NCBI GenBank assembly: GCA_946965045.2
Contig: OX337238.1
Coordinates: forward strand, 3,038,001 to 3,102,000
Direction of reading: 5' to 3'
Length of the DNA stretch: 64,000 bases
Source of the DNA: Epithemia pelagica
Taxonomy: Eukaryota; Protista; Bacillariophyta
The notes below the pieces were generated by a model. The model saw only the letters and a program-made list of their open reading frames with translations, was not told the origin of the DNA and did not search any database. Positions 1,182-38,690 of this stretch are shown here, piece by piece. Numbering within the stretch: the first letter of the stretch is position 1; the number at the start of each line of letters is the position of its first letter. Made by a program: the position numbers and the translations under genes.

Positions 1182-4100
1182 TTACGAGTCGCCTGCATTT
1201 TCTTTGTCAGCGTGTTTTCTTTCAAGCTCCTTGTCGTATTTTTGTTTTGATTTCCAATTGCATAGCGTGTTCCGGGCCTCTAACAGGAGCCGAAAGATAA
1301 CGGCAGAATCCTCTTGGTTACGTTTGTCTGGGTGAAAAATCTTGGAAAGCTCGCTGAATTTGCTGCGAATAGTTTTGGCCGACGCATCCGGCGCAACACC
1401 CAAAATATCATAGTGAGTTGCATCTTCGCGGTAAAATACTGCCACATCATCTTGGGGATTGGTCTTGAATTCCAACAACAACTGGCTTGTCTTTGTTCGC
1501 GCATCATGATCTCGTGTGAAATGATCTCTACGACGACTTTCTCGCTCCTCTAGATACTTTTGCTTCACGTCATTGCTCTCAAAGGCAGTTTTGGTTCGCT
1601 TAATGCCATTCATTTCTTCCAAATACTGAAATATTTCTGAACGACTGGCCGACCCATTTGCCAATGCCTCTCGAAATGCAATAGTACGGTAGTGATCTCG
1701 TTCAGCCCGTCGGACAGTTTCTCTATCCGTACGCAGCTTTCGTCCATACATTTTCTTGCGTCGTTTGTCCAAAAACGAATACAGCTTTCTGGATCTTCGC
1801 ATCTCATCCATTTTATCACTGGTCACATCAAGTTCTTTCCCAAGTTGTTCGCCATTCAGTACCATGCTGTTGGAGGATGCAACACTGAGAGTCCACTCGA
1901 CATTCAACTTGATAGCTGCTAAAACCTGAAAACTTACCTGAAACTTCCATCCTTTCCCTGACGTGCACATCGACCTTTGATTTGCACTTCCTCCGATAAA
2001 TCTGTTGAGAAGAAAGCCTGAATGACGTGGGCCCCACCAGCTTCAAGCATCTCCATGTCGTAGTTCTTGAAATCGGTACCACGGCCGTACTCGCGAATCA
2101 TGAGTGTGATGGCATCTCTGCGCGTTGCTTTTCTGAATGAAGATGTTTTTTCAGTCGGGGAAGTTGCTTCCGTGATAACTTGAGTGACTTTGCGCAACGG
2201 TTCCATCACCGATGAGTCGAAGAACCGTAGAAGCGTTGCTCTGGAATCAAAGAAGATCAAGATACTCCGGTTGATGCTTCTGTTGCCATTCCATGGCAAT
2301 TGTCGCCTGTCAATTTCGTTCTTGATCTCCAAGAAATGATCATCTTCTGTGTCGCACAGACACACGTCTAACAACGAGACACATTTTTATGAGTCGGATC
2401 AGGGAGCATACAAACTTCCACTAGAAATGTCGATGACGTACCATGTTCTGAATCCCCCGCAAATTTCAGTTTGTTGTTGCCGTATACCGATGGAACGTAT
2501 GAGTACTTCTCAATCCCGTAATCAGTTTCAAGTACATTTTTCTCTTCTAACCTTAGGTCTTTAAGCGTACCTGAAACACCAAGAATTACGTCAAATAGGA
2601 ACGGAACTTCAGCATATGAGATCGTCCCAATTCCGATTCGAAGGTTCATGCGACTTTCGACCTGTTCAGAAGAAACATTGCCCTTCTCGGCTTCCTTCAT
2701 GTAAGTGAACAGCGTTTTGTAGCTGTAGGAATACCTTGTCGTTGTTCCGTCAAAGTATTTGTAATGGATCCTCCCATCAATTATGTTGTACGATTTATGT
2801 TTTTCTCCTTTCCCGACTGATACCGCATCTTTGATTATTCGTTTAAGTTGAAGCTTGGCAATCTCTTGCGCATCCGGCGAAATGTTCTTTAAGACCTCGC
2901 GGGCTTCCTCTGAAGCCAAGAGTTCACTCTTCTCTTTTGTCTCCCGATTTTCCCCAAAGAATTTGAATAAATCTTTGATCTCTTTGCCTTTTTCTCCATC
3001 CGCGCCCAAACGCAACTTCGAATGGAAAGTATCACCATAAACTTCAGGAGAGAACAACACGTCAGCTTCGTCGAGAAGGAGTACCCTTAGTCGCCTTGGG
3101 CCGGATTCTGATCTCCTGGTTTGAGAGTCTTCAACTACACCGCTTGATCTCTGAACATGCCTCTTGACGATGTCTCTTACTTGATCATCAGGACGAGCAG
3201 CAAAACCAAGATCCATTAAAGTCGAATAGGAGATCAGACTGCTTACTCCGAAGGCTTCAAACATACACTTGAAATCATGATAATCCCGGTTGCTCAGGAA
3301 TGCGCTGTAACAAGCACATACGACTTCACAGTTGAACATCGCAAGGACGATCGAAACCACACCAAGAACGATTGACTTTCCTTCTCCTGTCTTGATCTCG
3401 ACCAAGTGGCTCTCGAGATTTTGAAAGTTCTTGGAAGATGAGTTAAGCATGAGAAGAATTGCCACGACCTGCGCTGGGTGAGGTCGAAGAAGGTATTTCG
3501 AACTGTTGTCACGTGCAACTGAAAGAGTGTCGCTTTTGCTTAACGTCCAATACGCAAAGACGTTGGCGACCATCTTACACAGTTGAGTTTCGTATCGAAT
3601 AGAAAAATCAACAGCTGTGCTCCGCGTTGCCATAACGATATCATCAAGACATTCTTCCATTTTTGAGTGATCCGTATGCACTGGAATATAGTCCAATATG
3701 ATTTGTTCGTAGTTTGTGCTGAAACAAGCGTATGAATGCTTGAGATCCGACTTTATGTTCTCTGGCATCTGGATCCTCTCAACAACGTAGTCGATTGTCT
3801 GTTTCGCTGTCGCACGGTTGAAGATGGCGTTCTGCCCGCCCTCAAAACAGTTGTGATCAAGCAGCAATTGCCTTGCAAAGGTCGCGTCCTCTCCTTCCAC
3901 AGTATTTATCAGGAGAAAGAGATCGAGCAGAAACTTCCCTCGATCGCTAGCGGCTTGCGACGACTTCAAAATCATCTCATCGATCATGACGTTAATCCGT
4001 CCACTCCAACATGGAATCTGAAAGCTTGCCTTTTTCATGAGAATGGATTTTGACGAAACGGAAGACGGGAGAGTTTCAGTCATCCGGAGGATCTCGTGGA

Positions 4101-7100
4101 GTTTTGCTTCGAATGTTCGTGATGCATTTTCAAAATGGCCGTAGGCATTCGATGCAACTTCCGTGTCAACCGGAAAGAAGGCATCAGCGATGCATTCTAG
4201 ATGCAACAGACAAGAGTGAATTCTCGGAAATTCAACATGGTAATTGGGAAATGAATCAAGCAATTTATTCAAATGACTTGCAACGTTTCCAGACTCTCGC
4301 TTAACTTTGCTGGAAGCTTCGGCTCGTATGCGAATGATCTCATCTTTGTCCATGTGATCTTCTAGCTTGATAAGTAGTTTTGCCTTTTGAACTGTTTCCG
4401 CTACATCCATACAAACGACAAAAATAGAATGTTCGATGACGTCCACAGCTGATGTGTGGAAGGAAATCTTCTGGATTTTCTCACGAATGATGGCAATGAG
4501 ACCCTCTGCATCATATACCAGGTCGTCGTACTTGGGGAACAAAGCTATGCTCTTCTGAAGTCGCTGTGCACAGTGCCCTTTAGGTAGGAATATGACAAGA
4601 AAACCATCAAAAGCAGAAAGCGATGGTGAGCAGCGCCAAATATCGAGGAGCACTGCCAGATCTGGAATATTCATTTGATCAACTAGAACTTTCGGGTGAG
4701 CTGCAACATTGTCAATCGTGCATCGTAGACTCTCAATGGCATTTTCCAGGCCGTCTGAGAGATGACCATATTCTTGATGTTCCAGTATATGTCTTGCAAG
4801 ACACGGTAAGTTGACCTGTACTCGTATGAAAGCCAGCAAGAGTCGCAGTTGGCCAGAAAGAGTCTTCAGAACCGATTTTGCCGCAGTCAATGAATCTTCC
4901 GATGTGTCGAGAACCCAGGTAATTCTTGAGACACAGTTTAAAAGAACCTGTTGAAATCGTGAAGCGAGACTCTGCATGTGTTGTGCAAGTTCCTGGCTTC
5001 CCTTCTTATTGTTAAACCAAAAATAGTTGGCAAATCGTTGAAGAAAATTCATGTTTGTTGCCTTCGCATTATCAGCCAGTTTCTGCCAAGATGGCCAATT
5101 ATGTGGTTTCGCCACCTCGTCAAGAACCTCAGAACAACGGGACGCATCTCCTTCTGCAAGTTCATCCACAAATGTACTACATATAGTGGTCGCCTGACTG
5201 ATTTCTCGGACCAACTTTGCGGCCTCCGATTTCAAGTTCTTCGACAGATCCCTAGCCGATGCTTGAATTGCATGTAAGTCCTTTCTTTCCTCATCCATAC
5301 TCTCTTGAAACCTAGGGGTCCAATTGTCAATTCTTTCGAACACCCTTTCAACATGAGAAAGATGCTTCAGGAGACTTGTCACACTATTCTCGGCCGTGCT
5401 AGGGTCCTGGTCAGTGTCGTCTCTTATTTCAGAAAGCGTCTTTTCTCCCTCCTTTGTCGCTCGTCGAAGATTTTGAATTAGCGCACTCTCAAACGAGAGG
5501 ATAACCTCAGGTAGACCGTCGATTCCCTTGATTTTATCGAAGCCCGTGGTGTCCAACCGTTCTCGTACAACAATCAGAAGGAGACGATGCTCTTCTAACT
5601 TCACAAGGAAAGAGTTCGAAGGAAGATTGTGACAATCCATTTCACGAGAAACCTTTTCCAGGGCCAACTTTGACGAGCATAGCTTCTTCTCTAGCATCCC
5701 AAGGAGCTGCTGGTGTCGCTTGACCAGCCAATCACTTTGCTGGGTGTTTTGTCGATGAAGCATAAGCTGAGAATGAAACGCGGTGACAGAGGGGGCCAAA
5801 TCTCCAATGAATGCAAGGCAATCACAAAAACGTGGAAAGGCGCACGGCCCTAATTCAAGGAAGCTACGTGCCGTTTTTGCCATTGTCCCCGCCAGCGATG
5901 AGAACCGAGTAAACACTTCACGACTTATTCGAACACCAGCTTCAGAACCACAGCAATCCCTGAATCTCTGAAGTGCATCCTTCATTCGAAGCAATGAGAT
6001 TTTGATTGCCGTTTTTTTCGCAAAAATGGTTTCCAAATCGCCACTGTTCTTTGGATGGATGTTAAGATCAAGAATTTCCTTTCCAATACAGCGAAACATG
6101 GCTTCGACAGAGTCCTCGTAAATGGCTTTAAAATCGACGTGACACAATATTGTCAATTCTTGCATCGCTTCGAGGACATAAAGATTCTGTTTAAAACTGG
6201 CAATCGTCTTAGTAAACAATGCATGGGTGCCATCAGATGCACCGAGTTCTACCACGTGTCGATTCAGCACGTCGGCGATACGACGAACTTCAAGACGAAA
6301 TTTATCTTGAGCTTCTTTCCAGGTATCAGCTTCTTCCTCGAGAACAGATGCAATATCTTTGAGAATTCTCATTCGGGTCATGACAGCGTTGTAATTCTGA
6401 CAGGTGAAGTCTAGTTTGAGAAGTTTCAGGTTCATGGTGAGTTGGTTCTGAAGTAGACTCAATACTGCATGTGGAAAAGGGGGCGAAAAGAAATTTTTTG
6501 GGTCCCCAAGTCCACCAACATCATCAACAAGATGAGTCAAAATGCTTGAACGCGATGACTCATGTCCTTGGTTCGACGAAAGAGATACTATGGGAGCGTT
6601 GGGCGTCGTTTTCTGGACCATATCCGTCAAGAGAGGCTTGAGCCAGCTGTCGGCTGAGTCCAGATCTTGAAGTAATTTGCCCATCCTTTTGCCAATACGT
6701 GTCGAGTCTCTCTGATCCACACTCTTGGTGAACAGATAGTGAAATGCCTCAAAGTCTTTACAGTTGCAACCCGTCATTCGAGTAATCGTTTTCATGGTTT
6801 CCTTCAACCCTTGAAACCGATCACCCAGAGAGTCACAGCTAATGACCACGACTGGTCGTACCGACCTGGCACTCTGAAGGGCACGACATAGGCCCATTGC
6901 GTTGACAATTTCCATGACAGGGCCAGCCGAGTCTCCAAAACCAGGCGAATCGCACACAACAATTGTTTTTCCACATTCGAGTTTTACAGGAAAAGACTGA
7001 ATGGTTCTTGTAACAGAAGTTCCCCCACACCCAGTTCGGAAGGCCTTGAGTTCTTCGGAGGGGAACTGACATGGTTCGTAATGGTCCGACCCATCAACTT

Positions 7101-7969
7101 CTTGCTCCGCAAACTCGACACCAGCCAAGCGGAGCAGCGTGGTAGTTTTCCCGCTTCCGGAACTTCCAATCAACAAAACAATATCTTGGCCTTCAATGCT
7201 CGAGGCTTCGGTCTGACTTTGTTTCAACAGTTTGTATAGCTCGCGAAGATCTAGAGGACAGGTTTCGTGCAACAAATTCGAAATGGAATCGACAATCTCT
7301 TGTGCAAGCAATGGAGTAGGGGCTTGTAGAAAGGCATGAAGTTTTTTCATGATCATAGCCAGGACTTTAAAGGGACCTGGTAAAGAATCGACGGTACCAG
7401 GGATGCGTCGCATGCACCACTTCAGACGATCTGGGTCGCATATCTGTACTGGATCGGATACGTAATCAGTAAGAGAAGAGCAAATCTCTTGAAGGACGTC
7501 CTCCATCAACAACGCCAAGTTGTCGTCGTGTACCTTCTCAAACGAATCCGATTCACTCGTATCATTACTGGGATCCACTGGACTCTTGACCTTGAGGGGT
7601 GGTTCTTCTTTTTCTTGATCGTTCGGTCCGTTTGTGGCAATCAGGTTGTCATGAAGGTCTTTTTCGTATCTTGTTGTCGTCTACTTCTTGTCCAACGATA
7701 TCCTCATGATCACGTTCCAGTTTGTTCTCGTCTTGGTGGTAGTGGTTAACTTCCGTGGCATCCTTCTCCTTATTCAGGGTAACAATCTCCATGGCGGCAT
7801 CGTCAGGGTCGTCTTGTTTCTTCTCATCTCCAATGTCGCGTTCTTCTTCATTCCAGACGTTTTGTGTGCTTGAAACTTGCAGTTGTTGCTCGACAGCAAC
7901 TCCTTTCTTGTTGTTGCGCTGCGATTGCGCCTTTTTGCGATTCTTTTTGGACTTGTGGTTCCTTCCCAT
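1182..7969 (-). CDS. Giant P-loop GTPase + helical region + SecA-like SF2 ATPase + C-terminal DnaJ domain protein (about 2200 aa after splicing and one frameshift correction)
   Basis: Exons 7969..2442, 2367..1938 and 1866..1182; introns 2368-2441 (GTACGT..TAG) and 1867-1937 (GTAAGT..CAG) keep the frame. GTPase motifs GSSGSGKT and DSPG. SecA-type motifs TGEGKS, DEAD, GRGTD and QIKGRCARQG. J-domain with HPD. The track start at 7578 is a GTG; the ATG ORF 7969-7649 joins it by one extra base in the T5 run at 7660-7664. Confidence 0.85.
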
Positions 7970-9164
7970 GGTATGTGGTTGCTGCTCTCAATTGTTCCGA
8001 AGTTTCTTTTGTGTGAGTGGAACAACCTTTTTATGTGTGGCTCTACTCTACACTGTCCATCGACGCGGTGTTTTGAGGTGAAACACAGAAGATCTTTTTT
8101 TGGGTGGTGAATTCGCACCACACAAAAAAAGATACGCAGTCTGTGGACCACTCGTTCCTTCGACGAACGCGATCAGAACTGATCCATCCATCTTGAACAA
8201 CAGGGCCTAGCACCATCTGGTTCTTGGAGCAACAAACCCGGCAGGTGATGGTATGACATGGGTGTCTTGTCGTCGTCATGACGCGACTCGCTGTGGATTT
8301 CCTGTTAACCATGGACGGTCCTCGGCCACACTCTTGAATTGATGGTTCTCTTCCTCAGTCAAAATGTTTGTTTCGTTTGTTTTTAGAAACAAGTTTGCGA
8401 GACCCGAACAGGGACAGAGACCAAGTCTCGATTCTCCCCCTATGGTTGTGCGACCCCTCCTTCTTCTCTATTCTCTTCTGTTTTGGAATGTCGCCCAGGA
8501 CGCAAAGGCTCAGACGAAAGATACACAACAACCAGATGCCAACAAAACGATATGGTTCCTCTGTTGATTCGGACAGAGAGAGGAAGCCTCTCGGTGAAAC
8601 AACAACACCGCCGTTGTGTTGGTGTTTGCCATTGTGTTGGTGTTTGCCATGTGGATATCCACAAAGAAATGGGTTCTGTCTGTCCTCAGTGGGTCATAAT
8701 CGATCCAGGAGATACTTCGGTTTCGCTGTGGAGCAGAATGCGCAATCGTCTACCAGTTTCGGTCGTTGTCGTTCGCCATGTTCGGTTCGCCATTGCGCTG
8801 AGATCTTTTGTGCATGGTATTTTTTTACAAAGATTTGAAAGCGACTCAAGAGCGATCGGAATGGACTACTGCTCCTCATTGGGCATCGGGACATAGCCTA
8901 TTCTTAGCTCTACTGCAACAAAACAAAAAAGACAGGTCGAAAGAATGCCACTCTCAATGATATCAACTATTCTTTCTATAGTCTCACTCATTCGTCTGAT
9001 ATCGTAAATCCAACGATTTTGTGCGTGGTCGTCATAAATGAATTACGGCCCCCGCTTTGGGGCTCGTCTCTGCTGCTGCTGCTTGGGATCATTTCCAAAC
9101 GAAAAAAAAACATGTCTTCCCGCTCGACTCTATGGATACCACAACAGTCACCCCGGTACATCAG

Positions 9165-10676
9165 TTATGCAAAAAGTTTCATATAGGGGTGCATCTCGAG
9201 CATGCCATTCGGCTCTTGTGCGGTTTGTGGGTGCAGCAGGAATGCGGGACGTTGGTAGTACGACGATTGGGTCGTCCATTGCAACAAGCACGCAAAGAGT
9301 TGGGATAGTTGATCCGTCAAACCAAGGCACTGGCAAACCTTGTTGGGTGGCACTCGTGTGGTTTGAATGCTGGTGACACCACTACCCACAAGGATGAGTC
9401 CATGGTCCTTGAAGTATACCATACCACATCCGAATCGGGGGACCCGCAGTTGTGGTGCCGTCCACACTTGGTTTCGTTTCGTATCCCAAATTTGGATCCG
9501 ATTCGATTCCTGGTCGCCACTCCATGCGCCTCCTGCCATGACCAAACAGCATCCTACTCGTAAAACGGTAGCATTGCATCGATTCGCCATTCTTGTTTGG
9601 AGAACCAGGTCTGTCTGCTTGTTGTTCTGGATCCACGAGGAGGAACTGGAAAAGGTTGGCATTATGGATGGAGTACTGAGAAATCGAATACTCGTTTTCG
9701 TCGCTTTCGTACTGCTTGCAAGTAGGTTCGTTCGTTTCCTCTTTTTGCTTGACAAGTGCAGGGGTTGCGTAAAAGAAGAAGGAGGTGTTACAACCAGGGG
9801 GTCGGTCAGTTGCAGCGATTCCATGGAATTTTCTCCCACAACGTAAATCTGACGACCAACCGTAGCAATCCCACAACCAATGGGATGCACATTCAAAAAG
9901 GGTCCAGCATATAGGATTGGGCCGTTGTTGTTGTTGCTGCTGCTGCAGGTATCAATCACATGGACCGACACCAGCCAGTCCCCGACAATGACAATGTACC
10001 GATCCTGAACGACGGTTGCCGCACATGCTGCTCGGGCAATGGGCAAGCGACAAAAGCGAGTCCATGCTGCTGTGGTGTTGGTGTGGTTGGTTTGTTCTTG
10101 TTCCGCGGTCGAGGAAGGAACGTTCGTGTCTTGTCGTTCCAACATGGACCACAAGGAGGTGATTTTGAGTCGTTCCACGCAATGCAGACTCAAGTTCCGG
10201 TGGTTTTGTCCCCCAATGGTGTACACATGGTCCTTGCAAACTACAGTGGCATGATGTTTCCGGGCTTTCTCCATACGGGGACCACGTTGCCATTTCGTTT
10301 GTCCTGGTGTCCACATTAGGACGGAATTGGTGACGGTTTGTCGAGTGAGATGTACCACACCTCCCACAATCAGTATCATGGACTTGATGTCTTGGTCTTT
10401 GGATTGTGGTGCTTCCCCTTCTCGCCCTGGTCGTGAGGAAGAAGTCGGATTCAAAGGCTGTGGAATAACCAGGGAGGCATGATACATTCTGCTCCTTGGC
10501 AAAGGTGGCACTGGACCAGTCTTCCATTCTGGAGAGTCACTGTCAAACCGTAGTCCAGAGCTACGTACTTCTTCTTGTATGGTCTTTCTGCTCCATGGGT
10601 TGTTGGGAGTTTCTTCCTCCAGGAACCGTGGACCTGTCGAGGAACGGTTCATATTCCTTTCAAGTAATGTCGTCAT
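9165..10676 (-). CDS. Kelch-repeat beta-propeller protein K1 (divergent, single exon, no obvious signal peptide)
   Basis: Kelch-type blocks: ILIVGG..NSV..W..GP.M...R..HA.VV; VYTIGG; RYIVIVG; LVMAGG. First in-frame ATG at 10676. Confidence 0.85.
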   Translation of the reverse strand: MTTLLERNMNRSSTGPRFLEEETPNNPWSRKTIQEEVRSSGLRFDSDSPEWKTGPVPPLPRSRMYHASLVIPQPLNPTSSSRPGREGEAPQSKDQDIKSMILIVGGVVHLTRQTVTNSVLMWTPGQTKWQRGPRMEKARKHHATVVCKDHVYTIGGQNHRNLSLHCVERLKITSLWSMLERQDTNVPSSTAEQEQTNHTNTTAAWTRFCRLPIARAACAATVVQDRYIVIVGDWLVSVHVIDTCSSSNNNNGPILYAGPFLNVHPIGCGIATVGRQIYVVGENSMESLQLTDPLVVTPPSSFTQPLHLSSKKRKRTNLLASSTKATKTSIRFLSTPSIMPTFSSSSSWIQNNKQTDLVLQTRMANRCNATVLRVGCCLVMAGGAWSGDQESNRIQIWDTKRNQVWTAPQLRVPRFGCGMVYFKDHGLILVGSGVTSIQTTRVPPNKVCQCLGLTDQLSQLFACLLQWTTQSSYYQRPAFLLHPQTAQEPNGMLEMHPYMKLFA

Positions 10677-11410
10677 TGTTTTGTGACTGCGACTACTGCG
10701 CAAATATTACCAGAACGACAAGGGAGACGAGGACTGCTGTGATGCTTGTCCGGAACGTTCGAGAAAGAGCCATTGGGAGAAGAGGAATCATCACCATGGA
10801 TATGAAAATGGATGAGCACAGTAGAGATAAAACGATGACTGACTGTGTGACCGTCAAAAATGGAAGAGAACTCTCGCCTGGCGCGGGAACGCCGGCACAG
10901 TGGAATCTTGGAAGGACTCAGATAGGAACTGACAGAAAGTAATCAGAGTAGGTAGTACTCCTCCAGCTACTCCTAGGTAGGCAAAGGAAGGAATTCAAGG
11001 TCCACGGCCTGTAGACGAATCCAAAGTCTTTACACCTGTCATGTATCGCTTTGCACCGACTGTGAGCAAAAGTAGTTAGTCCTGTGGTCCCCATGGTTCG
11101 CCCCATCATGAATCCAACCTACCGAATCCATGTTGCAACCGAATCATCGAGACGTAGTGATACGGCATTCATCAAGCGGTTGTGCGTGTCGAATGGTATC
11201 CAAGGCAAAGATAGCTACACTTGCATCACACTACAACTGGTGCCAACAACAAACGCATAGAACAAGTCTCATTTGAATGAGTCTTTTATACTTTGGTATT
11301 TTCACGGCTCTCTTGGTTTACAACAAGCGGCTCTGTCGCAGCACAGACACGGATGGTCACTCGAATACCAATATCGCGATCCAGAGAAGAACAGGATTCC
11401 TTTTGATACC

Positions 11411-13144: not shown

Positions 13145-15787
13145 TTACCCTGTGGTAGTAGCGTCGGTTGTATCTATAAATGTTGTTGTTGGTTCCCCAG
13201 CCTCAGTGGAGGATTTTCCTACCGTGGGTGCCAATTTCAAGTGATCTCGATAGGGTCGCAGGGCTTCCAGCATTTGTTGATAAGGCGTAATATCTTCCCA
13301 TTGTCCGGCCAAGAAAGATTTGAGCATTCCAGCTCCAAAGCCACTCAAGAGAGTGACACCTAGTTGACTACAGGATGTAGGCTTTGATCGAGACGGTCGT
13401 AAATTCCAGAACACAATATGTGGAATGGCCTCTGGATCGTACCCAGCTTGTTGATATTTGGATTGAATTTGTTCATAATCCGTTTCCCACTGCAGGTTGC
13501 CTCCTCTACGACTGGCTTCATCAAATTCCATATCTGAAAAACAAAACAAGGTCGTAGGCATTTCCTCCTTGGGAACCTTCCAAAACTGCGCCGTTTCCAA
13601 AATAAGATTGAAGACCGACTGAAAATCAGTATTGAACCCCCAGTCCATATCTTGAATCTGCAAAGCGCGCGATGCCAAATTGTTCAAGGAAGGAGGATCG
13701 ACAGTATACAATTGTGGTCTCGCCGAGAAGGACACAATCTTGCCCCGCCAAGGTGACGACAAAGGTTCCAAATCGGACACCAGCAAGGACAAGGCAATGG
13801 CCACACTCATGGGTTCACCACACATGGATCCCGACACATCGCATATAGACATGGAGCGGGGAGGGAGTGCACCTGTATTGCGAATATCTTGAACCAATTG
13901 AAGCCATTGTAGATTTGACTCGTCCTCATCCAACGAACTCTGGCTGCTACTACTAGCATAGGCTTTGTCGTTGTAGAGATTGACATCCTGTTGGACATGA
14001 GCAGACAAGGCCTTTTCGACAATCTTGTGAGGCAACAAGGCACCTGCCTTGATCTTGTTGGACAAGGTGGTAGGAGCACTATCCTCCTCTTCCGACTGTG
14101 GTTCTTGCTGTGCCATCAAGACTGCCTGTGCTTCCGACTTGGCCTCTTGGAGGTATTCATGATATCGTTGGGTATCGTGTCGCTCGTAAATGTGTCCATG
14201 GATAAAGCGACAATTCGACGGCATGCGATGGTAACTGACCAAATGCCACGATCCGGAACCAATATAATGTTCGGGAATTTGCGCCGCACCGCGTTGGCGC
14301 GACACTTCCTTGCGATACCAATCACGAGCAAAACTCAAATAGTCGTCGTACGTACCATTCGGCCATTGATGAATTGCCGGGGGATACAAACGTTCGACAA
14401 TGCCATTCACAATTCCGGTACGGCGATCATGCGATTTTTTGATCGTGGGGGCCCATTTGGCGGGCAAGCCGGAAAACCACGGTACGGGCAAGGGTTCGGT
14501 GGACGAGTCAGTGGCATTGGGATTGTTGTTGTGCAGGTGTTGATAGTGTTCATCCAATCGTTCCTTGTCGTGTTCCAATTCCTGAGCAAACAAGTCTGCT
14601 ACGGCATTCCACAACCGTCGATAGTCTTGATCCGTGTCCAGCAAGCTCTGAGCATGCCGTTTCAGTTCGCTGTGCTTTTCCTGTCGTAACACCCGTGCAA
14701 CCTCTTGGCGCTCGCGGCTATACATGGTTTGGAAGGATTTATAGGCTGCACGAATGTCGTCGTCCACCCATTGGATGATTCGTTGTCCACCGGGTTTGTT
14801 GTGATTACCCTGTTGTCGTAGGGGTTCCAAGGTAAAGGCATTGTGAATGGTATATCCCCCTTGTCGGAAGAATGACACATAGTCTGGACAGGCAAAAAAA
14901 ATCCGTACCAAAAATGGTAGTGCACTACCTGTGTCAACATCTTGATAGCGTTGTTGAAACAGTCGTTGTTCTTGTGCTTCTTCGTGTTTGCGTCGTTGTT
15001 TTCGGGACCCATAGGTCCCTATAATATCGTCCAAGGCGGTTGGTCCGTACGCGACCAAGACGAGCAAATCCAAAATGGCTTTCCAGCACGTCAACTCGGC
15101 AATGGGCCGTAGATTTTGAATCACGGTATCGGGCGTTGTCTGGTACAACCAATAGAGGGCTTGATAAAAGTTGCGGCGATCCGACTTGCCCTGACGAGGA
15201 TCGCCCAATTGAACAATCAATTGCAACGTGACATGTGGATCTTCGGCCCACGCCTGACGAAGCAAGTGATGCAATCGTCGGACCCGAATGCCGGGAACGA
15301 CGTCAAAATACAAATCGACACAGGCACTGCCCGTGGCCCAATACGTGAGAGCGCCATTTTCGGTCCATCCCAATTGGGCTACTCCAGTAGTGGGCGTGGA
15401 GTTGGTTGTGGATGCCGTGCTGCTACATATGGTGGTTGGCCCATGGTCCGTGTCGCCATCAGTACCATCGTCGTCGTCGTCATCGTCGTCGTAGTAGTCG
15501 TCGTAGAAGTAGTAGTCGTCGTCGTCGTCGTCGTCGTCGTCGTGAATCTGGGTTTCGTCGTTGTCCTCGATACTGCTGAGGAGAGTCGTACTGGTGTACC
15601 ACCCACAACCAGTGCGTTCTTGTGGCATGCCAACAAACTGACTCACAGCAAGAACAGTAGCTGGTGAGGATCGTCGAACGGTGCCGTGTTGCGCCGTGTG
15701 TTTGTCATGCTGCACACGATAGGAGGGCCTCGTACCAAACGCTGCTGTCATACCTCCAGAGGATCGAGCCGCGAAATGGCACATCAA
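13145..15787 (-). CDS. DUF2828-family protein (TROVE-like helical domain + C-terminal vWA), copy 1
   Basis: 880-aa ORF with TENGA, SACVDLYF, DPRQGKSD, KWAP, KAGALLPH, MIDAS-like CDVSGSM, FSDMEFD and FWNLR, which are the recalled DUF2828 hallmarks. Confidence 0.88.
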   Translation of the reverse strand: MMCHFAARSSGGMTAAFGTRPSYRVQHDKHTAQHGTVRRSSPATVLAVSQFVGMPQERTGCGWYTSTTLLSSIEDNDETQIHDDDDDDDDDYYFYDDYYDDDDDDDDGTDGDTDHGPTTICSSTASTTNSTPTTGVAQLGWTENGALTYWATGSACVDLYFDVVPGIRVRRLHHLLRQAWAEDPHVTLQLIVQLGDPRQGKSDRRNFYQALYWLYQTTPDTVIQNLRPIAELTCWKAILDLLVLVAYGPTALDDIIGTYGSRKQRRKHEEAQEQRLFQQRYQDVDTGSALPFLVRIFFACPDYVSFFRQGGYTIHNAFTLEPLRQQGNHNKPGGQRIIQWVDDDIRAAYKSFQTMYSRERQEVARVLRQEKHSELKRHAQSLLDTDQDYRRLWNAVADLFAQELEHDKERLDEHYQHLHNNNPNATDSSTEPLPVPWFSGLPAKWAPTIKKSHDRRTGIVNGIVERLYPPAIHQWPNGTYDDYLSFARDWYRKEVSRQRGAAQIPEHYIGSGSWHLVSYHRMPSNCRFIHGHIYERHDTQRYHEYLQEAKSEAQAVLMAQQEPQSEEEDSAPTTLSNKIKAGALLPHKIVEKALSAHVQQDVNLYNDKAYASSSSQSSLDEDESNLQWLQLVQDIRNTGALPPRSMSICDVSGSMCGEPMSVAIALSLLVSDLEPLSSPWRGKIVSFSARPQLYTVDPPSLNNLASRALQIQDMDWGFNTDFQSVFNLILETAQFWKVPKEEMPTTLFCFSDMEFDEASRRGGNLQWETDYEQIQSKYQQAGYDPEAIPHIVFWNLRPSRSKPTSCSQLGVTLLSGFGAGMLKSFLAGQWEDITPYQQMLEALRPYRDHLKLAPTVGKSSTEAGEPTTTFIDTTDATTTG
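15470..15543. repeat. (GTC/GTA)n trinucleotide microsatellite encoding a poly-Asp/Tyr linker
   Basis: Direct reading: gtcgtcgtc...gtagtagtc, translated as DDDDDDDDDYYFYDDYYDDDDDDDD. Confidence 0.9.
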
Positions 15788-27474: not shown

Positions 27475-30324
27475 ATGGGTCTTCCAGTTGGATCCTTTCG
27501 CAACAAGCAACAACAGCCGCCACAACAATCAGCAAGACACCACGTTCCATACCATGAAGTAAGTCAAATGCAACGAGATTCTTGTGTGGGGATATTTATT
27601 TCTCTACAGCACTCATTCTTGTTCTATAGGTGTAGCCGTGCACCCAGATTCTTGTGGAATGCGGCCGCTCGTCTCTCCACCTCCTCCGATTTGGGCAAAA
27701 GAGGCATGGCAGCCGTTGGTACAAGTCGTCCCTTCGATTGCCGCTTGGCGCTTCCTTCCGGTCGTCGTGGGCAGCAGGACCTCGTTGTGCGACACGGCAC
27801 CTTACAACATTCACCACCACCATTTCCTCTTCTTGCGTTGAGCCATTCCTTTTGCATGCCACAACGCATTTCTTGTTGTTGGCACTCCAGTACTACTTTT
27901 CCCAACAGTAACGAGAACCACCAGAACCAGAGTCACGACGACGGCAACGATGGCGACACGAACCATGGGCCAACACCCACTGTTGCTGACGACGACGACG
28001 ACGACTACGATGACGACGATGATGACGATGGCTACGATGGTAATGATGGCGACACGGACCATGGGTCAACGACAAGCACCAGTGCATCCACAACCAACTC
28101 CACACCCACTACTGGAGTAGCCCAATTGGGATGGACCGAAAATGGAGCTCTCACCTATTGGGCCACGGGCAGCGCCTGTGTCGATTTGTATTTTGATGTT
28201 GTACCCGGCATATCGGTGAGTCAATTACACGAGTTGCTTCTTCGGGCATGGGATGAAGACCCACATGTCACATTGCAATTGATTGTCCAACTGGGGGATC
28301 CTCGCAAGGGCAAGTCGGATCGCGACAATTTTTATCAAGCCTTGTATTGGTTGTACCAGAAAACGCCCGAGACGGTGGTACTGAATCTACGACCAATCGC
28401 CGAGTTGACATGTTGGAAATCCATTTTGGATTTGCTCGTCTTGGTCGCGTACGGACCAACCGCCTTGGATGATACCAGGTCCCAAGAATCACAACAACGA
28501 CTGGACCGACAGCAACAAGAACACGACACTAGTACACTGCCGTTTCTGGTACGGCAATTTTTTGCTTGTCCAGACTATGTACCGTTGTTCCAACAAGGTG
28601 GATATACCATTCACAATGCCTTTACCCTGGAACCCCTACGCAAAACCAACCAGAAATACCGCAACCACAACAATCCCGGTAAACAACGAATCATCCAATG
28701 GGTGGACAACGACATTCGTGTGGCGTATAAATCCTTTCAAACTGTGTATAATCGCGAGCGTCAAGAGGTAGCACGGGTGCTACGAAAGGAAAAACACAGC
28801 GAACTGAAGCGGCATGCGCAGAGCTTGCTGGAAACGGATCGTGACTATCAACGGTTGTGGAATGCCGTGGCCGACTTGTTTGCTCAGGAATTGAAACACG
28901 ACAAGAAACGATTGGATGAACATTATCAACATCTGAGCAATCGCAATCCCAATTCCACGGACACGTCTACCGAGCCCTTGCCCGTACCGTGGTTTTCGGG
29001 TTTGCCCGCCAAATGGGCCCCCACGATCAAAAACTCGCATGATCGCCGTACCGGAATTGTGAATGGCATTGTCGAACGCTTGTATCCCCCGGCAACCCAT
29101 CAATGGCCGAATGGTACGTACGACGACTATTTGAGTTTTGCTCGTGATTGGTATCGCAAGGAAGTGTCCCGCCAACGTGGTGCGGCGCAAATTCCCGAAC
29201 ATTATATTGGTTCCGGATCGTGGCACTTGGTCAATTACCAACGCATGCCATCGAATTGCCGCTATCTCCATGGACACATTTACGAAAAACACGATACCCA
29301 ACGATATCATGAATACCTCCAAGAGGCCAAGTCGGAAGCACAGGCAGTCTTGATGGCGCAGCAGGAACCAGAGTCGGAAGAGGAGGATAGTGCTCCTACC
29401 ACCTTGTCCAACAAGATCAAGGCAGGTGCCTTGTTGCCTCACAAGATTGTCGAAAAGGCCTTATTGACTCACAACGAGCTGGACAACGATCGCAACAACG
29501 AGGAATCCAGTGCTAGTAGTACTAGCAGCCAGAGTTCGTTGGATGAGGACGAGTCAAATCTGCAATGGCTTCAATTGGTTCAAGATATTCGCAATTCAGG
29601 CGCACTCCCTCCCCGCTCCATGTCTATATGTGATGTGTCGGGATCCATGATTGGTGAACCCATGAATGTGGCCATTGCTTTGTCCTTATTGGTGTCCGAT
29701 TTGGAACCTTTGTCGTCACCTTGGCGGGGCAAGATTGTGTCCTTCTCGGCGAGACCACAATTGTATACTGTCGATCCTCCTTCCTTGAACAATTTGGCAC
29801 CGCGTGCTTTGCAGATTCAAGGTATGGACTGGGGGTCCAATACTAATTTTCAATCCGTCTTCAATCTAATTTTGGAATCGGCGCAGTTTTGGAAGGTTCC
29901 CAGGGAAGAAATGCCCACGACCTTGTTTGTTTTCTCCGACATGGAGTTTGATCAAGCCAGGACTTTCTCCCACCTACAATGGGAAACGGATTATGAACAA
30001 ATCCAATCCAAATATCAACAAGCTGGGTACGATCGAGAGGCCGTTCCACACATTGTATTTTGGAATTTACGACCGTCTCGATCAAAGCCTACATCCAGTA
30101 GTCAGCGAGGTGTCACTCTCTTGAGTGGCTTTGGAGCTGGAATGCTCAAATCCTTCTTGGCTGGACAATGGCAAGATATTACACCCTTTAAACAAATGTT
30201 GGAAGCTCTCCGACCATATCGAGATCACTTGAAATTAGCACCCACGGTAGCAAAATCCTCCAACGACCCTTCAAAACCGAAATCAACAAGGATAGATGCA
30301 ACCGACGCAACTACCATAGTGTAA
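27475..30324 (+). CDS. DUF2828-family protein (TROVE-like + vWA), copy 2, inverted relative to copy 1
   Basis: 949-aa ORF with long stretches identical to 13145-15787. The true start may be a downstream ATG (MAAVGTSRP region or 27856). Confidence 0.88.
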   Translation: MGLPVGSFRNKQQQPPQQSARHHVPYHEVSQMQRDSCVGIFISLQHSFLFYRCSRAPRFLWNAAARLSTSSDLGKRGMAAVGTSRPFDCRLALPSGRRGQQDLVVRHGTLQHSPPPFPLLALSHSFCMPQRISCCWHSSTTFPNSNENHQNQSHDDGNDGDTNHGPTPTVADDDDDDYDDDDDDDGYDGNDGDTDHGSTTSTSASTTNSTPTTGVAQLGWTENGALTYWATGSACVDLYFDVVPGISVSQLHELLLRAWDEDPHVTLQLIVQLGDPRKGKSDRDNFYQALYWLYQKTPETVVLNLRPIAELTCWKSILDLLVLVAYGPTALDDTRSQESQQRLDRQQQEHDTSTLPFLVRQFFACPDYVPLFQQGGYTIHNAFTLEPLRKTNQKYRNHNNPGKQRIIQWVDNDIRVAYKSFQTVYNRERQEVARVLRKEKHSELKRHAQSLLETDRDYQRLWNAVADLFAQELKHDKKRLDEHYQHLSNRNPNSTDTSTEPLPVPWFSGLPAKWAPTIKNSHDRRTGIVNGIVERLYPPATHQWPNGTYDDYLSFARDWYRKEVSRQRGAAQIPEHYIGSGSWHLVNYQRMPSNCRYLHGHIYEKHDTQRYHEYLQEAKSEAQAVLMAQQEPESEEEDSAPTTLSNKIKAGALLPHKIVEKALLTHNELDNDRNNEESSASSTSSQSSLDEDESNLQWLQLVQDIRNSGALPPRSMSICDVSGSMIGEPMNVAIALSLLVSDLEPLSSPWRGKIVSFSARPQLYTVDPPSLNNLAPRALQIQGMDWGSNTNFQSVFNLILESAQFWKVPREEMPTTLFVFSDMEFDQARTFSHLQWETDYEQIQSKYQQAGYDREAVPHIVFWNLRPSRSKPTSSSQRGVTLLSGFGAGMLKSFLAGQWQDITPFKQMLEALRPYRDHLKLAPTVAKSSNDPSKPKSTRIDATDATTIV

Positions 30325-30625: not shown

Positions 30626-31948
30626 TCATGAATTTGTTTTTGACATTTGATACGACTCATTTGGCACTTGTTCGCAGAGTCGACGAAAACACCACGTATT
30701 CTTGTCCATCAAGGATAGTGTCTCACAAGAAGGATTCGAAAGGCCACTAAGAATGGCAATACCCTTTGAGTGAACGACCATTGTGCCTTCGTAATGTACC
30801 TCTGCGAATCGTGGGAGTTTCCAGACACGGTTGCGAATTGTATCCCATACGGTCGCTGCCACTTCCACGCTGAGAATAATACAGGATCCCACAGCCACGG
30901 ATGTAATGGAGGTTCCAACCTGTGCGTCTGAAAGATCGACACCCGTGTGAGTTTGCCAAGCACAAGGCGAGAGAAAGACTTGTTGTGCTGTAGTTTCCGT
31001 CGTCTCCTTGTTGTCCCATGGTTGCTGAAACTCCAAAAACTCAACCTCTTTCAGAAAAGCACTCTCACTGCGTCCTCCCACAACAAGGATGCGATGGCCA
31101 ACGATCGCACTTGTAAACCTTGCTCGAGGAACATTCATGGATGGTCCGGCCATGACAATGTGCACAACTGTATCGATAATATCAACCGTGGACAAATAAC
31201 TCCCGTTATGGATTCCACCCATGACGACAATGTAACGATTGTGAACAGCAACAGCCGAACATCCATCTCTTTCCGTAGACAATCGACAAGTCAGGGTCGT
31301 CCATTGGTGGTTCCTGGTAGAGGAACTTGCCGGTGAAACTTGCAACAAGTCTTTAGAATCGATGCGTTCGATACTGTCCAATCGTGCACTTCCATTGTAT
31401 CCTCCCATGACATAGACGCCTCCATTGCATACCACAGCTGCATGAGAGTCTCGATTTTCGCACAAGGGTGGTCCCTCCTGCCACTGCTTGTTTTCTGCTG
31501 CGTTTTCCAAATTCAACAACAACACGGAATTGGTGGTGCCTTGATTCGCGCCTTTGTGTCCTCCCAACACGACGACCATCTGTACATTGGCCTTTTCGGG
31601 ATGATCCAGCACAACGGAGGCATGTAACCAACGGCATTCATCTCCCATTGATAAAGGAGGCCAGTCATGGATCTTCCAGTGTGGCAGCACCGCACTGCTT
31701 GTTGTGTTGTCGCTGCTGTCGGTAAAGACAAGCACCGATTGGAAGGCTTGTTCCTGCAGTGTCAATGCCGGTGTAGGTGATCGGAACAACGCCGTTACGT
31801 TTGTTGAGGAGAGGAAGTGCCATAGGGAATCAAGAATCCATGTCATTGTCACCATGGGTCTCGTTTTCGAGACAGAGAGGAGGTGGATATGGATGGAATT
31901 GCAGAACGCGACTGATGAAAAATGTGGTGCACCGATGTCGAGCGACAT
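30626..31948 (-). CDS. Kelch-repeat protein K3 (single exon; alternative start at 31855)
   Basis: Repeated VVVLGG/VYVMGG/YIVVMGG/ILVVGG blocks and W.EGP.L..R..HAAVVCNG. Confidence 0.85.
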   Translation of the reverse strand: MSLDIGAPHFSSVAFCNSIHIHLLSVSKTRPMVTMTWILDSLWHFLSSTNVTALFRSPTPALTLQEQAFQSVLVFTDSSDNTTSSAVLPHWKIHDWPPLSMGDECRWLHASVVLDHPEKANVQMVVVLGGHKGANQGTTNSVLLLNLENAAENKQWQEGPPLCENRDSHAAVVCNGGVYVMGGYNGSARLDSIERIDSKDLLQVSPASSSTRNHQWTTLTCRLSTERDGCSAVAVHNRYIVVMGGIHNGSYLSTVDIIDTVVHIVMAGPSMNVPRARFTSAIVGHRILVVGGRSESAFLKEVEFLEFQQPWDNKETTETTAQQVFLSPCAWQTHTGVDLSDAQVGTSITSVAVGSCIILSVEVAATVWDTIRNRVWKLPRFAEVHYEGTMVVHSKGIAILSGLSNPSCETLSLMDKNTWCFRRLCEQVPNESYQMSKTNS

Positions 31949-36900: not shown

Positions 36901-38690
36901 TAAGCGTCTACTCCTTCAAAGGCCTTGGAGATGCATTGTAAGTGAAGAACAGAAGCATGAATACTTGCAAAGTCATCCTCAAACTTGAGAAAGGTGGCCA
37001 ACATCTTCTTGAGACGGCTTTCCATAGTTTCCGTTTCGTCCTTCACTTTCTTCAATGCATCGGACAAGAGCGACGAATATGCCTCTTTGTCCACGTGTTT
37101 CTTCAGAGACTTGGCTTGCGCCGATGATTTTACAGATTTCGATATATCTTCGTACAAGACGGTGACGTCGTACTCATTCAATGGAATTCCTTCTTGTACG
37201 TGGAACGAAATTGCGTCAATCTTTTGACTCAAATCGAGCAAACGCTGAATCACACGCAAGCGCAAGTCCTCGTATCGTGGGAATTTGCTTGCAGAATCCT
37301 GCAACGCCACAAGACCATGCGACGAGGACTCTTGAGCCACCACCAGACGGGATCCGAACGATCGTAAGGCCCGCGGAGACGACGAGCCAAACCATAGATC
37401 CATAAAGAGACTCAAATCGCGGAACTCCATATCATCCATGCAAGAATCGATATGAGACAAAAGGCTATCAATGCTATTTACCACTGAATCATGGGTTGCA
37501 TCGAAAAGCTGAACAAGGAACGGCGATTTGTCATCAATCGCCAGAATGTCTCTTGCCAACGATGCTTCTTGGAGCGTCAACCTGGCAAATGTCAAGTACA
37601 ACGCAAGTTCGTTCCGCAGATTCACCATGATAATGTTGGCAGTCGAACGCGCGTTGCTTGATTTTGACATGCTCCTATTCAACCGATCCGAGGATTCAAC
37701 AAGGGCAGAATGAAACTTCTGTACAAGACGACTTCGAATGTTGACGAAATTGTCAACTCGGCAGTTTCCGTGGAGGCGATCTACGATCCAATCTCCCAAT
37801 TTCCGAATGTTGAATCCTTTTCGTTCCTCGACGAACTTGCTCCAGTTGTCCCATTTGTTCTGACTCGACAGTTCTTCCAGCAAAACGGCGGCAGAGAAGC
37901 CTTTCTGAAGTTGGACAAGCATTGCCTCTCCTTCCGCACAAGCATGAGCCATGATAGAAGCAGTGTCTCCCTTGTCTCCAAAGGTCCAAGATTCCTCGTT
38001 CAACATATCCGCCATGTTATCTTCTACGACGTCTTGGAATGCCCTCTTCGATAAGGGCAATGATTCCAGAGAAGGATCTTCTCGCTCCCATGTATCACTG
38101 GTTTCTAGAGAATCGTCTTCCAAACATGAGGCCTCCGGAACCTGTAGAAAAGACCGAGCTTCTTTCGCCGAGAGGATCGTTCCGGATCCCAAACTTCCCA
38201 CCTTCGAAGGAGTCGCGATCTTGTCGACATTAGGAACTGGAACGTCTGTTTGGCGTTCTGGAATGAGCGGTGTTTCTTCTCGTGCAATTGAGAAGTATGG
38301 GTGCACCATGTGGTAAATGACATTGTATACAGCGATGATGAAGAAAAAGAAGACATAGAGGAACAAAACGAAGATAGTTTGCTCGTAGCATGACTCATGG
38401 AATTGCGGAGGAGAGGAATTCGAGGTTTTCGCGTCACGCCCTGATGGACGAGTGGATGGGCGCCGCGTCTTCCGAAGGACTTGGTTGTTGTTACCTCCTT
38501 TCGCTTTTGGAGTCTCCTCATTGGACACGAGCTCCTCGGAAGGAGTACGTTCCGTGAGTGACTCATCGTCACTAACCCACTGGTTCAGTGTCATGGTGAT
38601 CGGCTGCAACTCCACCCACAGTACGGAAACAAGGATGGCCCGAACGAAAAAAACTGGAAGACCATCCAACTGGTCCGTTTCCATCTGCAC
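33966..38690 (-). CDS. SecA-like SF2 ATPase + DnaJ domain protein, paralog 2, with an N-terminal TM segment instead of the GTPase; one frameshift
   Basis: Introns 35128-35202 and 34627-34697 sit at the same positions as in paralog 1. Motifs TGEGKS, DEVD, GRGTD, QIKGRAARQG and HPD. One extra base in the C6 run at 35296-35301. 38690 is a GTG; ATGs are at 38684 and 38594. Confidence 0.82.

What the first reader, a model, noticed from the sequence alone, without database searches (positions are those of the whole stretch)
1182..7969. GTPase + SecA-like ATPase + J-domain fusion protein of about 2200 aa
Seen: a P-loop GTPase (GSSGSGKT, DSPG), a long helical region, the SecA-specific motif set (TGEGKS, DEAD, GRGTD, QxxGRxxRQG) and a terminal HPD J-domain in one spliced ORF. 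Established: true SecA is a bacterial/plastid protein-translocation motor and J-domains recruit Hsp70. Divergent SecA-DEAD proteins of unknown function occur in some protists and animals. Inference: a GTP-gated polypeptide-threading machine that hands substrates to Hsp70, plausibly in immunity or proteostasis. I do not recall this three-enzyme architecture being characterised.
Basis: partly seen in the sequence, partly recalled or inferred. Interest (0 to 1): 0.75.

Follow-up and report, generated by a model that had tools for sequence, protein, structure and literature searches.

The report
Giant GTPase–SecA-like–J-domain protein gene
A diatom nuclear gene encodes a soluble protein of about 2,100 residues. 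It joins a GIMAP-like GTP switch, a long helical arm, a motor built like the bacterial protein-pusher SecA and an Hsp70-recruiting J domain, and it belongs to a widespread family that no searchable paper has studied.

Summary
Two short introns (2368-2441 and 1867-1937) are spliced out in cDNA-like contigs of one public run. This joins the J-domain exon to the motor. The 5' join (7580-7690) is unresolved.

- **N-terminal domain:** GIMAP/AIG1-like by fold (Foldseek top hit GIMAP7, E 6e-8).
- **Motor:** specifically SecA-like. The family profile hits only SecA/SecA2 first (E 1e-15). A model of an intronless 38%-identical homologue gives SecA Z 29.7 over about 550 residues, against DEAD-box Z 20 over about 330. 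It keeps the insert at the PPXD site and the long scaffold helix. No wing domain, finger or C-terminal tail was detected.
- **Not the plastid SecA:** the genome has its own true SecAs (350-385 bits against 36).

The GTPase plus SecA-like core is not unique. It occurs in ciliates, Hydra, Diplonema, metagenomes and giant ORFs of intracellular bacteria (Legionellales, Chlamydiae). Wolbachia carries the SecA-like motor, but its GTPase was not detected. The J-domain tail recurs in four paralogues here and in two other organisms. This scan had already found the family on other DNA of this genome.

The function is inferred: a nucleotide-gated polypeptide-remodelling motor that hands chains to Hsp70.

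The parts
7652..7969 (-). 5' ORF (ATG at 7969): basic then acidic low-complexity N-terminus. It is homologous to the N-termini of the paralogues. Its frame differs from the main exon and the join is unresolved.
   Evidence: 'GDEKKQ..AME' shared with P0002-4; no strong donor; DNA-like runs show no indel here
2442..7680 (-). Main exon. The frame is open from 7680 and the listed ORF runs 7578-2371. The exon ends at 2442 (phase 1) before a GTACGT donor.
6589..7200 (-). GIMAP/AIG1-like G domain: G1 GSSGSGKT 7144-7167, G2 TSVTR 7006-7020, G3 DSPG 6940-6951, 'LFTKSVD' at the G4 place 6715-6735
   Evidence: GIMAP4 is the only long PDB sequence match; Foldseek: GIMAP7/5/2, Toc34, GBP1
3829..6483 (-). 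Fast-evolving alpha-helical arm of about 885 aa, with no Pfam family and no transmembrane segment
   Evidence: (44-46% identity to same-genome paralogues; the first half is not recognisable beyond them)
3469..3831 (-). Conserved helical bundle just before the motor, shared across the family
   Evidence: helices 4-120 of the proxy model at pLDDT about 90
2443..3468 (-). SecA-like NBD1 with a 160-aa insert at the PPXD site: PHPAQV 3466-3483, Walker A TGEGKS 3373-3390, family signature CACYSAFLSNRD 3283-3318, LLDEADV 3058-3078, motif III GVSGTL 2563-2580
2368..2441 (-). Intron A, 74 nt, GTACGT..TAG
   Evidence: prediction; joint 2367->2442 in an X4 contig, absent from X1-X3
1938..2367 (-). Exon 2: SecA-like NBD2 (GRGTD 2072-2086, GGAHVIQAF 2012-2038, QIKGRCARQG 1955-1984)
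   Evidence: 53% identity to P0008; contiguous in the Amphora transcript P0007
1867..1937 (-). Intron B, 71 nt, GTAAGT..CAG
   Evidence: prediction; joint 1866->1938, 77 letters on the short side; Amphora 'GSFSMVLN' matches the joined reading
1182..1866 (-). Exon 3: about 150 aa of charged helical linker, then a type-III J domain (1221-1415, HPD 1326-1334). The stop is at 1182-1184.
   Evidence: DnaJ E 7e-14; conserved at 75, 73 and 47% in three paralogues

Best explanation
SHOWN. This is one intact nuclear gene. It has three exons verified at the 3' side and an unresolved 5' join. It encodes a soluble protein with no signal peptide or transmembrane segment, made of these parts in order:
- a GIMAP/AIG1-like G domain;
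- a fast-evolving helical arm of roughly 900 aa;
- a SecA-type two-lobed DEAD motor with all ATPase motifs intact, an insert at the PPXD site and, in the modelled homologue, a long scaffold helix;
- a charged helical linker;
- a C-terminal J domain with HPD.

It belongs to a large unnamed family whose constant core is the G domain plus the SecA-like motor. The ends vary: J domain, vWA, transmembrane segment, U-box, ankyrin or LRR.

INFERRED. It works as a nucleotide-gated protein-remodelling machine in the cytosol. The G domain acts as the assembly or activation switch, by analogy with GTP-dependent dimerisation of GIMAP, septin and Toc GTPases. The SecA-like clamp grips an unfolded or extractable polypeptide segment and moves it with ATP. 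The J domain next to the motor fires Hsp70 so that the emerging chain is captured. This would put a SecA-style pusher and a Sec63/BiP-style ratchet in one protein.

The process it serves is probably protein quality control or a host-microbe conflict. The grounds are the paralogue expansion, the swapped end modules and the repeated sharing with obligate intracellular bacteria.
For: - **Gene unity:** spliced joints at exactly the predicted GT..AG introns occur in X4 contigs only. The open frame is uninterrupted.
- **G domain:** invariant G1, G2 and G3 columns in 17 homologues. AF2 model pLDDT 81. Foldseek top hits GIMAP7 (E 6e-8), GIMAP5/2, Toc34 and GBP1. Atlas neighbours are AIG1/MMR_HSR1 clusters.
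- **Motor, by sequence:** the family profile hits 24 SecA/SecA2 sequences at E 8e-16 to 6e-8, spanning SecA residues 95-553 including the end of the PPXD. The next best hit is Mss116 at 1.8e-5.
- **Motor, by structure:** proxy model pLDDT 83. Foldseek ranks 1-36 are all SecA (4e-19 to 2e-9), and the next hit is at 9e-7. VIA Z is 29.7 with about 550 aligned residues, against about 20 with about 330 for DEAD-box proteins.
- **J domain:** DnaJ E 7e-14 with HPD.
- **Conservation of the three-part layout:** four paralogues here and two other organisms at 36-38% identity.
- **Conflict or proteostasis hints:** at least 9 family genes in this genome, some clustered. Fused U-box, ankyrin and LRR modules occur in giant intact ORFs of Legionellales, Chlamydiae and unclassified proteobacterial MAGs, and Wolbachia carries the motor. 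Bacterial and eukaryotic rows interleave in the tree. A Legionella SecA-DEAD-like protein was listed as eukaryote-derived (PMC4256840).
Against: - No substrate, partner, localisation or expression condition is known.
- The run with spliced contigs is not on record as RNA, and it does not cover the G-domain part of the gene.
- The SecA wing domain, two-helix finger and C-terminal tail were not detected. The region after residue 700 of the proxy model has low confidence, so SecA-style pushing is not established.
- The structural evidence for the whole motor comes from a 38%-identical homologue, not from this protein.
- The G4 motif is degenerate (FTK, no NKxD), so guanine specificity is unproven.
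- The G-domain homodimer prediction gave no answer.
- SF2 motors can also act on nucleic acids.
Confidence: 0.45

Rival explanations
1. The motor is a nucleic-acid helicase or translocase, for example an RNA sensor or remodeller. It would be an SF2 motor acting on RNA or DNA. The G domain would serve as an oligomerisation switch and the J domain as an adaptor, as in RIG-I-like or DEAD-box systems.
For: The two RecA lobes align with DEAD-box helicases at Z about 20. Helicase_C gives a weak hit on exon 2. From my own knowledge, GIMAP- and GBP-like GTPases and SF2 helicases both occur in innate immunity.
Against: The sequence profile and both structure searches put SecA far ahead of any helicase. 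The insert sits at the PPXD site and keeps the SecA-like 'Y.V.DG ... EA.KG' stretch. No RNA-binding accessory domain was found.
Confidence: 0.13
2. It is a true membrane translocation motor. It would dock on a channel (Sec61/SecY-type or an organelle import pore) and drive proteins across a membrane. The Toc-like GTPase would act as the receptor or gate, with Hsp70 on the cis side.
For: SecA is the closest fold. Toc34/33 are among the G-domain matches. One paralogue in the window was noted by another reader as having a transmembrane N-terminus (s1-257160); I did not check that.
Against: This protein has no signal peptide, transit peptide or transmembrane segment. The wing domain and the two-helix finger that insert into SecY were not detected. 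The genome keeps plastid and nuclear true SecAs for that job.
Confidence: 0.1
3. The gene model over-merges. The G-domain part, or the 5' ORF, would be expressed apart from the motor/J part through an internal promoter. Alternatively this copy could be decaying at its 5' end.
For: There is a frame change between the 5' ORF and the main frame with no good splice donor. X4 contigs do not cover 6390-7789. One X4 contig lacks 2 letters at 2537.
Against: The 1,736-codon frame has no stop. The G domain is the best-conserved part among paralogues at 76%. The same G domain plus motor sits in single ORFs in many organisms.
Confidence: 0.07

Closest known systems
SecA / SecA2 (bacterial and plastid preprotein translocase ATPase)
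   Same: Two-lobed DEAD motor with SecA-type motifs (TGEGK[ST], DE.D, GRGTD, GR..RQG). An insert of about 150-160 aa sits at the PPXD site with a SecA-like C-terminal stretch, and a long helix follows NBD2. SecA is the best sequence and structure match by many orders of magnitude.
   Different: Only about 16% identity. Pfam SecA_DEAD scores 34.5 bits by hmmscan, or 36 in the six-frame search against 350-385 for this genome's true SecAs. There is no SecA_PP_bind Pfam hit. No wing domain, two-helix finger or Zn/SecB-binding tail was detected. The motor is embedded in a protein of about 2,100 aa with a G domain and a J domain. No membrane or SecY link is known.
GIMAP/AIG1 (and Toc34/159, septin-related) GTPases
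   Same: The fold and the G1-G3 motifs ('D[ST]PGF.D[ST]'), with an 'FT[KHR]' strand at the G4 place. GIMAP7/5/2 are the top structural matches.
   Different: The AIG1 Pfam score is below the cut-off (15.9 against 27). There is no clear G4 aspartate. Here it is the N-terminal module of a giant motor protein, not a small stand-alone or tandem GTPase.
Divergent SecA_DEAD domains in giant bacterial proteins (Omnitrophota, Actinobacteria; bioRxiv 10.1101/2023.11.21.568195) and 'secondary SecA_DEAD proteins' (PMC4452313)
   Same: SecA DEAD motor plus preprotein-binding-like part, without the scaffold and wing, embedded in very long multidomain proteins.
   Different: Those proteins are membrane-rich bacterial proteins linked to secretion or predation. 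This family is soluble, carries a GIMAP-like G domain, and is found in eukaryotes and intracellular bacteria. I did not test their relation in a tree.
Sec63-BiP and ClpB/Hsp104-Hsp70 (functional analogues, from my own knowledge)
   Same: A J domain or a motor placed next to a polypeptide conduit, so that Hsp70 captures the chain. That is cooperation between an ATP motor and Hsp70.
   Different: No homology to Sec63 or the AAA+ disaggregases. The cooperation here is only inferred from the fusion.
Legionella fallonii lfa2470 and other 'SecA DEAD-like' eukaryote-like proteins (PMC4256840); T. congolense SecA-DEAD-like orthogroup (PMC6199001)
   Same: They carry the same Pfam label. Giant relatives in Legionellales, Chlamydiae and Wolbachia carry the family's NBD1 signature, and many also carry the same G domain.
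   Different: In those papers they are only listed, with no function or architecture analysis. I did not retrieve lfa2470 itself.

Membership tests
SecA (protein translocase subunit) | DEAD-type NBD1/NBD2 with SecA motif set | tested here: met
   Motifs located. PF07517 is above its cut-off. Profile against PDB gives SecA at E 8e-16.
SecA (protein translocase subunit) | Preprotein cross-linking domain (PPXD) inserted in NBD1 | tested here: inconclusive
   A 160-aa insert lies between DEAD and GVSGTL. Its C-terminal half aligns with the SecA PPXD end and stem. The proxy model shows a two-strand stem plus an alpha/beta bulb, and about 160 more residues align with full SecA than with the PPXD-less motor. 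There is no PF01043 hit, and the insert was not folded or searched alone.
SecA (protein translocase subunit) | Helical scaffold, helical wing and two-helix finger | tested here: not met
   Only one long helix (proxy residues 647-688) follows NBD2. Alignments to SecA end near model residue 714. The rest has low confidence and runs into the J domain.
SecA (protein translocase subunit) | Orthology with bacterial or plastid SecA | tested here: not met
   The genome's own plastid and nuclear SecA score 350-385 bits on PF07517, against 36 for this gene. Identity is 25% over 59 aa. The two groups are separated by very long starred branches.
SecA (protein translocase subunit) | Works with the SecYEG channel at a membrane | not testable with these tools
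   No transmembrane segment or targeting signal. No partner data.
GIMAP/AIG1 GTPases | TRAFAC G-domain fold with G1-G3 and closest similarity to AIG1 | tested here: met
GIMAP/AIG1 GTPases | Pfam AIG1 (PF04548) above the gathering score; G4 guanine-specificity motif | tested here: not met
   AIG1 scores 15.9 bits against a cut-off of 27. The G4 place reads FTK with no invariant Asp.
J-domain proteins (Hsp40, type III) | J domain above the Pfam cut-off with an HPD loop | tested here: met
   PF00226 scores 52 bits against a cut-off of 27.8. HPD lies at 1326-1334.
J-domain proteins (Hsp40, type III) | Stimulates Hsp70 ATPase | not testable with these tools
   A biochemical assay is needed.
Unnamed G-domain + SecA-like giant protein family | NBD1 signature TGEGKS .. 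C[AV]CYS.[YF]LS.RD .. DE[VA]D[VL]F, with the A1-type G domain upstream | tested here: met
   (99* clade with Amphora P0007, P0008, P0009 and the paralogues)

The most novel reading that the evidence does not exclude
Eukaryotes possess a cytosolic, SecA-derived polypeptide motor family that is switched by a GIMAP-like GTPase. In this diatom clade it is wired directly to Hsp70 through a J domain. It would act as a protein-extraction or unfolding machine in cell-autonomous defence or quality control. Obligate intracellular bacteria (Legionellales, Chlamydiae, Wolbachia) would have repeatedly captured or exchanged it as an effector scaffold.
Probability: 0.25. Interest if true: 0.8.

Novelty: new variant of a known kind. 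Interest (0 to 1): 0.62.

Why it matters
SecA is textbook-restricted to bacterial and plastid secretion. Eukaryotic cytosol is thought to move and unfold polypeptides with AAA+ machines and Hsp70. A conserved, catalytically intact SecA-type motor in the cytosol would be a new class of eukaryotic protein-remodelling machine. This one is fused to an immunity-type GTPase and to an Hsp70 recruiter. It would combine the two known ways of driving a chain through a conduit, the SecA push and the J-domain/Hsp70 ratchet.

The family's spread offers tractable systems to test it: ciliates, Hydra, diplonemids, foraminifera, diatoms and intracellular bacteria with effector-type modules. That spread also points to a role at the host-microbe interface.

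Tried and rejected
- Exons were handled by reference. The intronless homologue P0008:1100-1951 served as proxy for the whole motor.
- **RNA runs:** no run is on record as RNA. Only X4 behaved as cDNA, and it left 6390-7789 uncovered.
- **5' intron:** enumerating all frame-restoring GT..AG pairs gave no donor like the two verified ones. The join is left open.
- **G-domain homodimer:** Complex prediction gave no answer, which is no evidence either way.
- **Helical arm:** the ESM Atlas feature search on the arm gave no usable hit.
- **Bacterial scan:** It was redone with the NBD1 block A4.
- **Literature:** five searches found only listings of 'SecA DEAD-like' proteins and no functional study.
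- **Other-species claim dropped:** loci L001 and L002 first looked like another species. They are the same organism, at 100% and 90% DNA identity to own-genome paralogues, so they are not counted as independent conservation.
- **Plastid SecA rejected:** this reading is ruled out.
- **Big representative search:** not used, because no claim here rests on the absence of relatives.
Full report
**What is there**

The feature lies on the minus strand. The ORF listing gives four co-linear pieces:
- 7969-7652 (106 aa, starts with ATG);
- 7578-2371 (1,736 aa);
- 2374-1937;
- 1970-1185.

Pfam finds SecA_DEAD on residues 1320-1451 of the large piece (E 1.7e-8, above the cut-off). The P-loop region (115-268) gives only weak AIG1, nSTAND and AAA hits. 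The third piece gives weak Helicase_C and P-loop_SecA hits. The last piece carries a clear DnaJ domain (E 7e-14). There is no hydrophobic segment of transmembrane type. The single peak is the buried strand after Walker A.

**Gene structure**

Reading the junctions, I predicted two introns:
- a 74-nt intron at 2368-2441 (GTACGT..TAG, phase 1);
- a 71-nt intron at 1867-1937 (GTAAGT..CAG, phase 2).

No public run is on record as RNA. One small run of the same study (X4) nevertheless behaves as cDNA. Its contigs carry joints 2367->2442 and 1866->1938 with CT..AC ends on the plus strand. They cover exonic patches only and end in an Illumina adapter. The three DNA-like runs carry the unspliced sequence without any difference. 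So the J-domain exon is spliced to exon 2, and exon 2 to the main exon.

The joined reading is also what an Amphora transcript (P0007) shows as continuous protein.

X4 does not cover 6390-7789, so no RNA evidence bears on the G-domain part. That part shares an uninterrupted 1,736-codon frame with most of the motor.

The 5' ORF is real coding sequence by homology, since its 'GDEKKQ..AME' stretch matches the paralogues' N-termini. It sits in another frame, and no frame-restoring GT..AG pair has a good donor. That join stays open. The protein is therefore about 2,085 to 2,182 residues long.

Exons were used by reference.

**The G domain**

I aligned 17 homologues (A1). Invariant columns are G1 (G..G.GK), a Ser/Thr pair at G2, D.PGF.D at G3 and a later Asn. 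The G4 place reads FTK without an invariant Asp.
- Against PDB sequences, most hits are P-loop-only. The longest and most significant match beyond the P-loop is GIMAP4.
- The AF2 model (pLDDT 81) finds GIMAP7 first (E 6e-8), then GIMAP5/2, Toc34 and GBP1.
- Its Atlas neighbours are AIG1/MMR_HSR1 clusters.

It is a GIMAP-like TRAFAC G domain. Guanine specificity is likely but not shown.

**The motor**

A 36-row alignment of the motor module (A2) has the intronless metagenomic homologue P0008 as first row. P0008 is 37% identical to the main-exon part and 53% identical to exon 2.
- **Sequence profile:** it hits 24 SecA/SecA2 sequences at E 8e-16 to 6e-8 over SecA residues 95-553. The next family (Mss116) is at 1.8e-5 and matches on NBD2 only. 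The alignment runs through the C-terminal half of the PPXD, where the window reads 'YNIIDGRIHY ... YMKEAEKGNV'.
- **Model:** the P0008 model has pLDDT 83, above 90 for most of residues 1-700.
- **Foldseek:** SecA fills ranks 1-36 (4e-19 to 2e-9). The next entry is at 9e-7.
- **VIA-align:** Z is 29.7 with about 550 aligned residues. DEAD-box proteins give Z about 20 with about 330 residues. The PPXD-less SecA motor gives Z 26.8 with 391 residues.

The model shows a strand-stem plus alpha/beta insert between DE.D and G.TGT, and a 42-residue helix after NBD2. It shows no confident wing domain or finger.

The motor is therefore specifically SecA-derived but trimmed. The same trimming is reported for divergent SecA_DEAD domains of giant bacterial proteins (bioRxiv 10.1101/2023.11.21.568195).

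**It is not the plastid SecA**

The genome (60.5 Mb, 23 contigs) has a plastid secA on two contigs and a nuclear SecA. These score 350-385 bits on PF07517, and this gene scores 36. Identity to the plastid SecA is 25% over 59 residues.

In a quick maximum-likelihood tree of 67 rows, the two true SecAs are split from the family by long starred branches. The window sits in a 99% clade with its paralogues, Amphora P0007, P0008 and P0009. Rows left out of the tree: P0010, 11, 18, 25, 41, 54, 57, 58 and 59, and L030, 32, 35, 36 and 40.

**The family**

The word search returned 60 relatives. About 28 share the same G domain upstream of the motor. These include Tetrahymena, Hydra, Diplonema and many metagenomic proteins.

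Per-region identity to the same-genome paralogues:

| Region | Identity |
|---|---|
| G domain | 76% |
| J exon | 73-75% |
| Motor | about 60% |
| Helical arm | about 45% |
| N-terminus | about 38% |

This genome has at least 9 family genes, including a four-gene cluster on contig 8. Four of them carry the same J exon about 0.6 kb downstream of the motor exon.

Loci L001 and L002 turned out to be the same organism. Independent support for the three-part layout comes from two sources:
- P0009's scaffold, with the same three-exon layout at 36% identity;
- P0008, with SecA_DEAD and a C-terminal DnaJ in one ORF.

A scan of prokaryotic genomes with the NBD1 signature found 30 loci. Most are in intracellular lineages: Parachlamydiaceae and other Chlamydiae, Simkaniaceae, Legionellales and two Wolbachia. 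The rest are mainly unclassified Gammaproteobacteria MAGs, with a few others.
- They are intact ORFs of 0.9-3.5 thousand residues.
- 11 of 21 carry the same G domain. The two Wolbachia ORFs did not.
- Some carry U-box, ankyrin or LRR modules.
- The Wolbachia wCon copy lies beside a Mur ligase gene, so it is not a stray eukaryotic contig.

Bacterial and eukaryotic rows interleave in the tree. A Legionella SecA-DEAD-like protein had been listed as eukaryote-derived (PMC4256840).

**How it probably works**

Shown:
- an intact ATPase motif set of SecA type;
- an intact P-loop, G2 and G3;
- an HPD J domain;
- one gene at the 3' side;
- a soluble protein.

Inferred: the G domain gates assembly, the SecA-like clamp handles a polypeptide, and the adjacent J domain loads Hsp70 onto it. 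I give this about 45%. The rivals are nucleic-acid helicase (13%), membrane translocation motor (10%) and over-merged or decaying model (7%).

The variable end modules and the traffic with intracellular bacteria lean towards quality control or conflict. No expression or interaction data exist. The G-domain homodimer prediction gave no answer.

**Novelty**

Five full-text searches found the Pfam label only in lists (Legionella, trypanosome and Daphnia transcriptomes) and in two bacterial studies. None describes this eukaryotic architecture.

This scan had already reported the same family on other DNA of this genome. The closest case is a paralogue 24 kb beyond this window (s1-248322), with the same reading. 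My results were obtained before I read those notes, and they agree with them.

Noticed in passing
window 33966-38690 (-): A second family gene sits in the window. It has SecA_DEAD on the 1,139-aa ORF and a DnaJ exon at 33966-34685. It is 44% identical in the motor and lacks the G domain. It is also noted as s1-257160.
   Followed up: partly
window 9165-10703 (-), 13145-15787 (-), 27475-30324 (+), 30626-31948 (-): Each of the two SecA-like/J genes lies beside a Kelch gene and a DUF2828+DUF7788 gene. This looks like a duplicated block. From memory, DUF2828 proteins are annotated as vWA-containing in plants. That would echo the vWA tails fused to the motor in other family members. I did not test this.
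   Followed up: no
window 2537: One X4 contig (2514-2705) lacks 2 letters here, at depth 5.35 of 8.75. That would shift the frame of the main exon. It could be an error, an allele or cross-mapping from a paralogue; this is not resolved.
   Followed up: no
window 2304-2341: DNA-like runs X1 and X2 break their contigs here. The 38-40 nt pieces have about four times the flanking depth. This is a short stretch of exon 2 that is probably identical among the paralogues.
   Followed up: no
G000:C14:17882-18997, C23:25206-26321, C1:1821870-1823135: The genome carries a plastid-type secA on two contigs with identical scores. It also has a nuclear SecA whose match holds one in-frame TAA, probably an intron.
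   Followed up: partly
L018 1191-10337, L035 591-9710, L019 3-9788, L036 5202-9743: Giant intact bacterial relatives carry eukaryote-like N-terminal modules: U-box in a Pseudomonadota MAG, ankyrin in Legionellales and LRR in Parachlamydiaceae. The Wolbachia wCon copy lies next to Mur ligase, COQ9-like and ankyrin genes.
   Followed up: partly
L038 (Simkaniaceae MAG) 7050-10067: This 1,006-aa ORF branches between the true SecAs and the family in the tree. It may be an intermediate or a secondary SecA-type protein.
   Followed up: no
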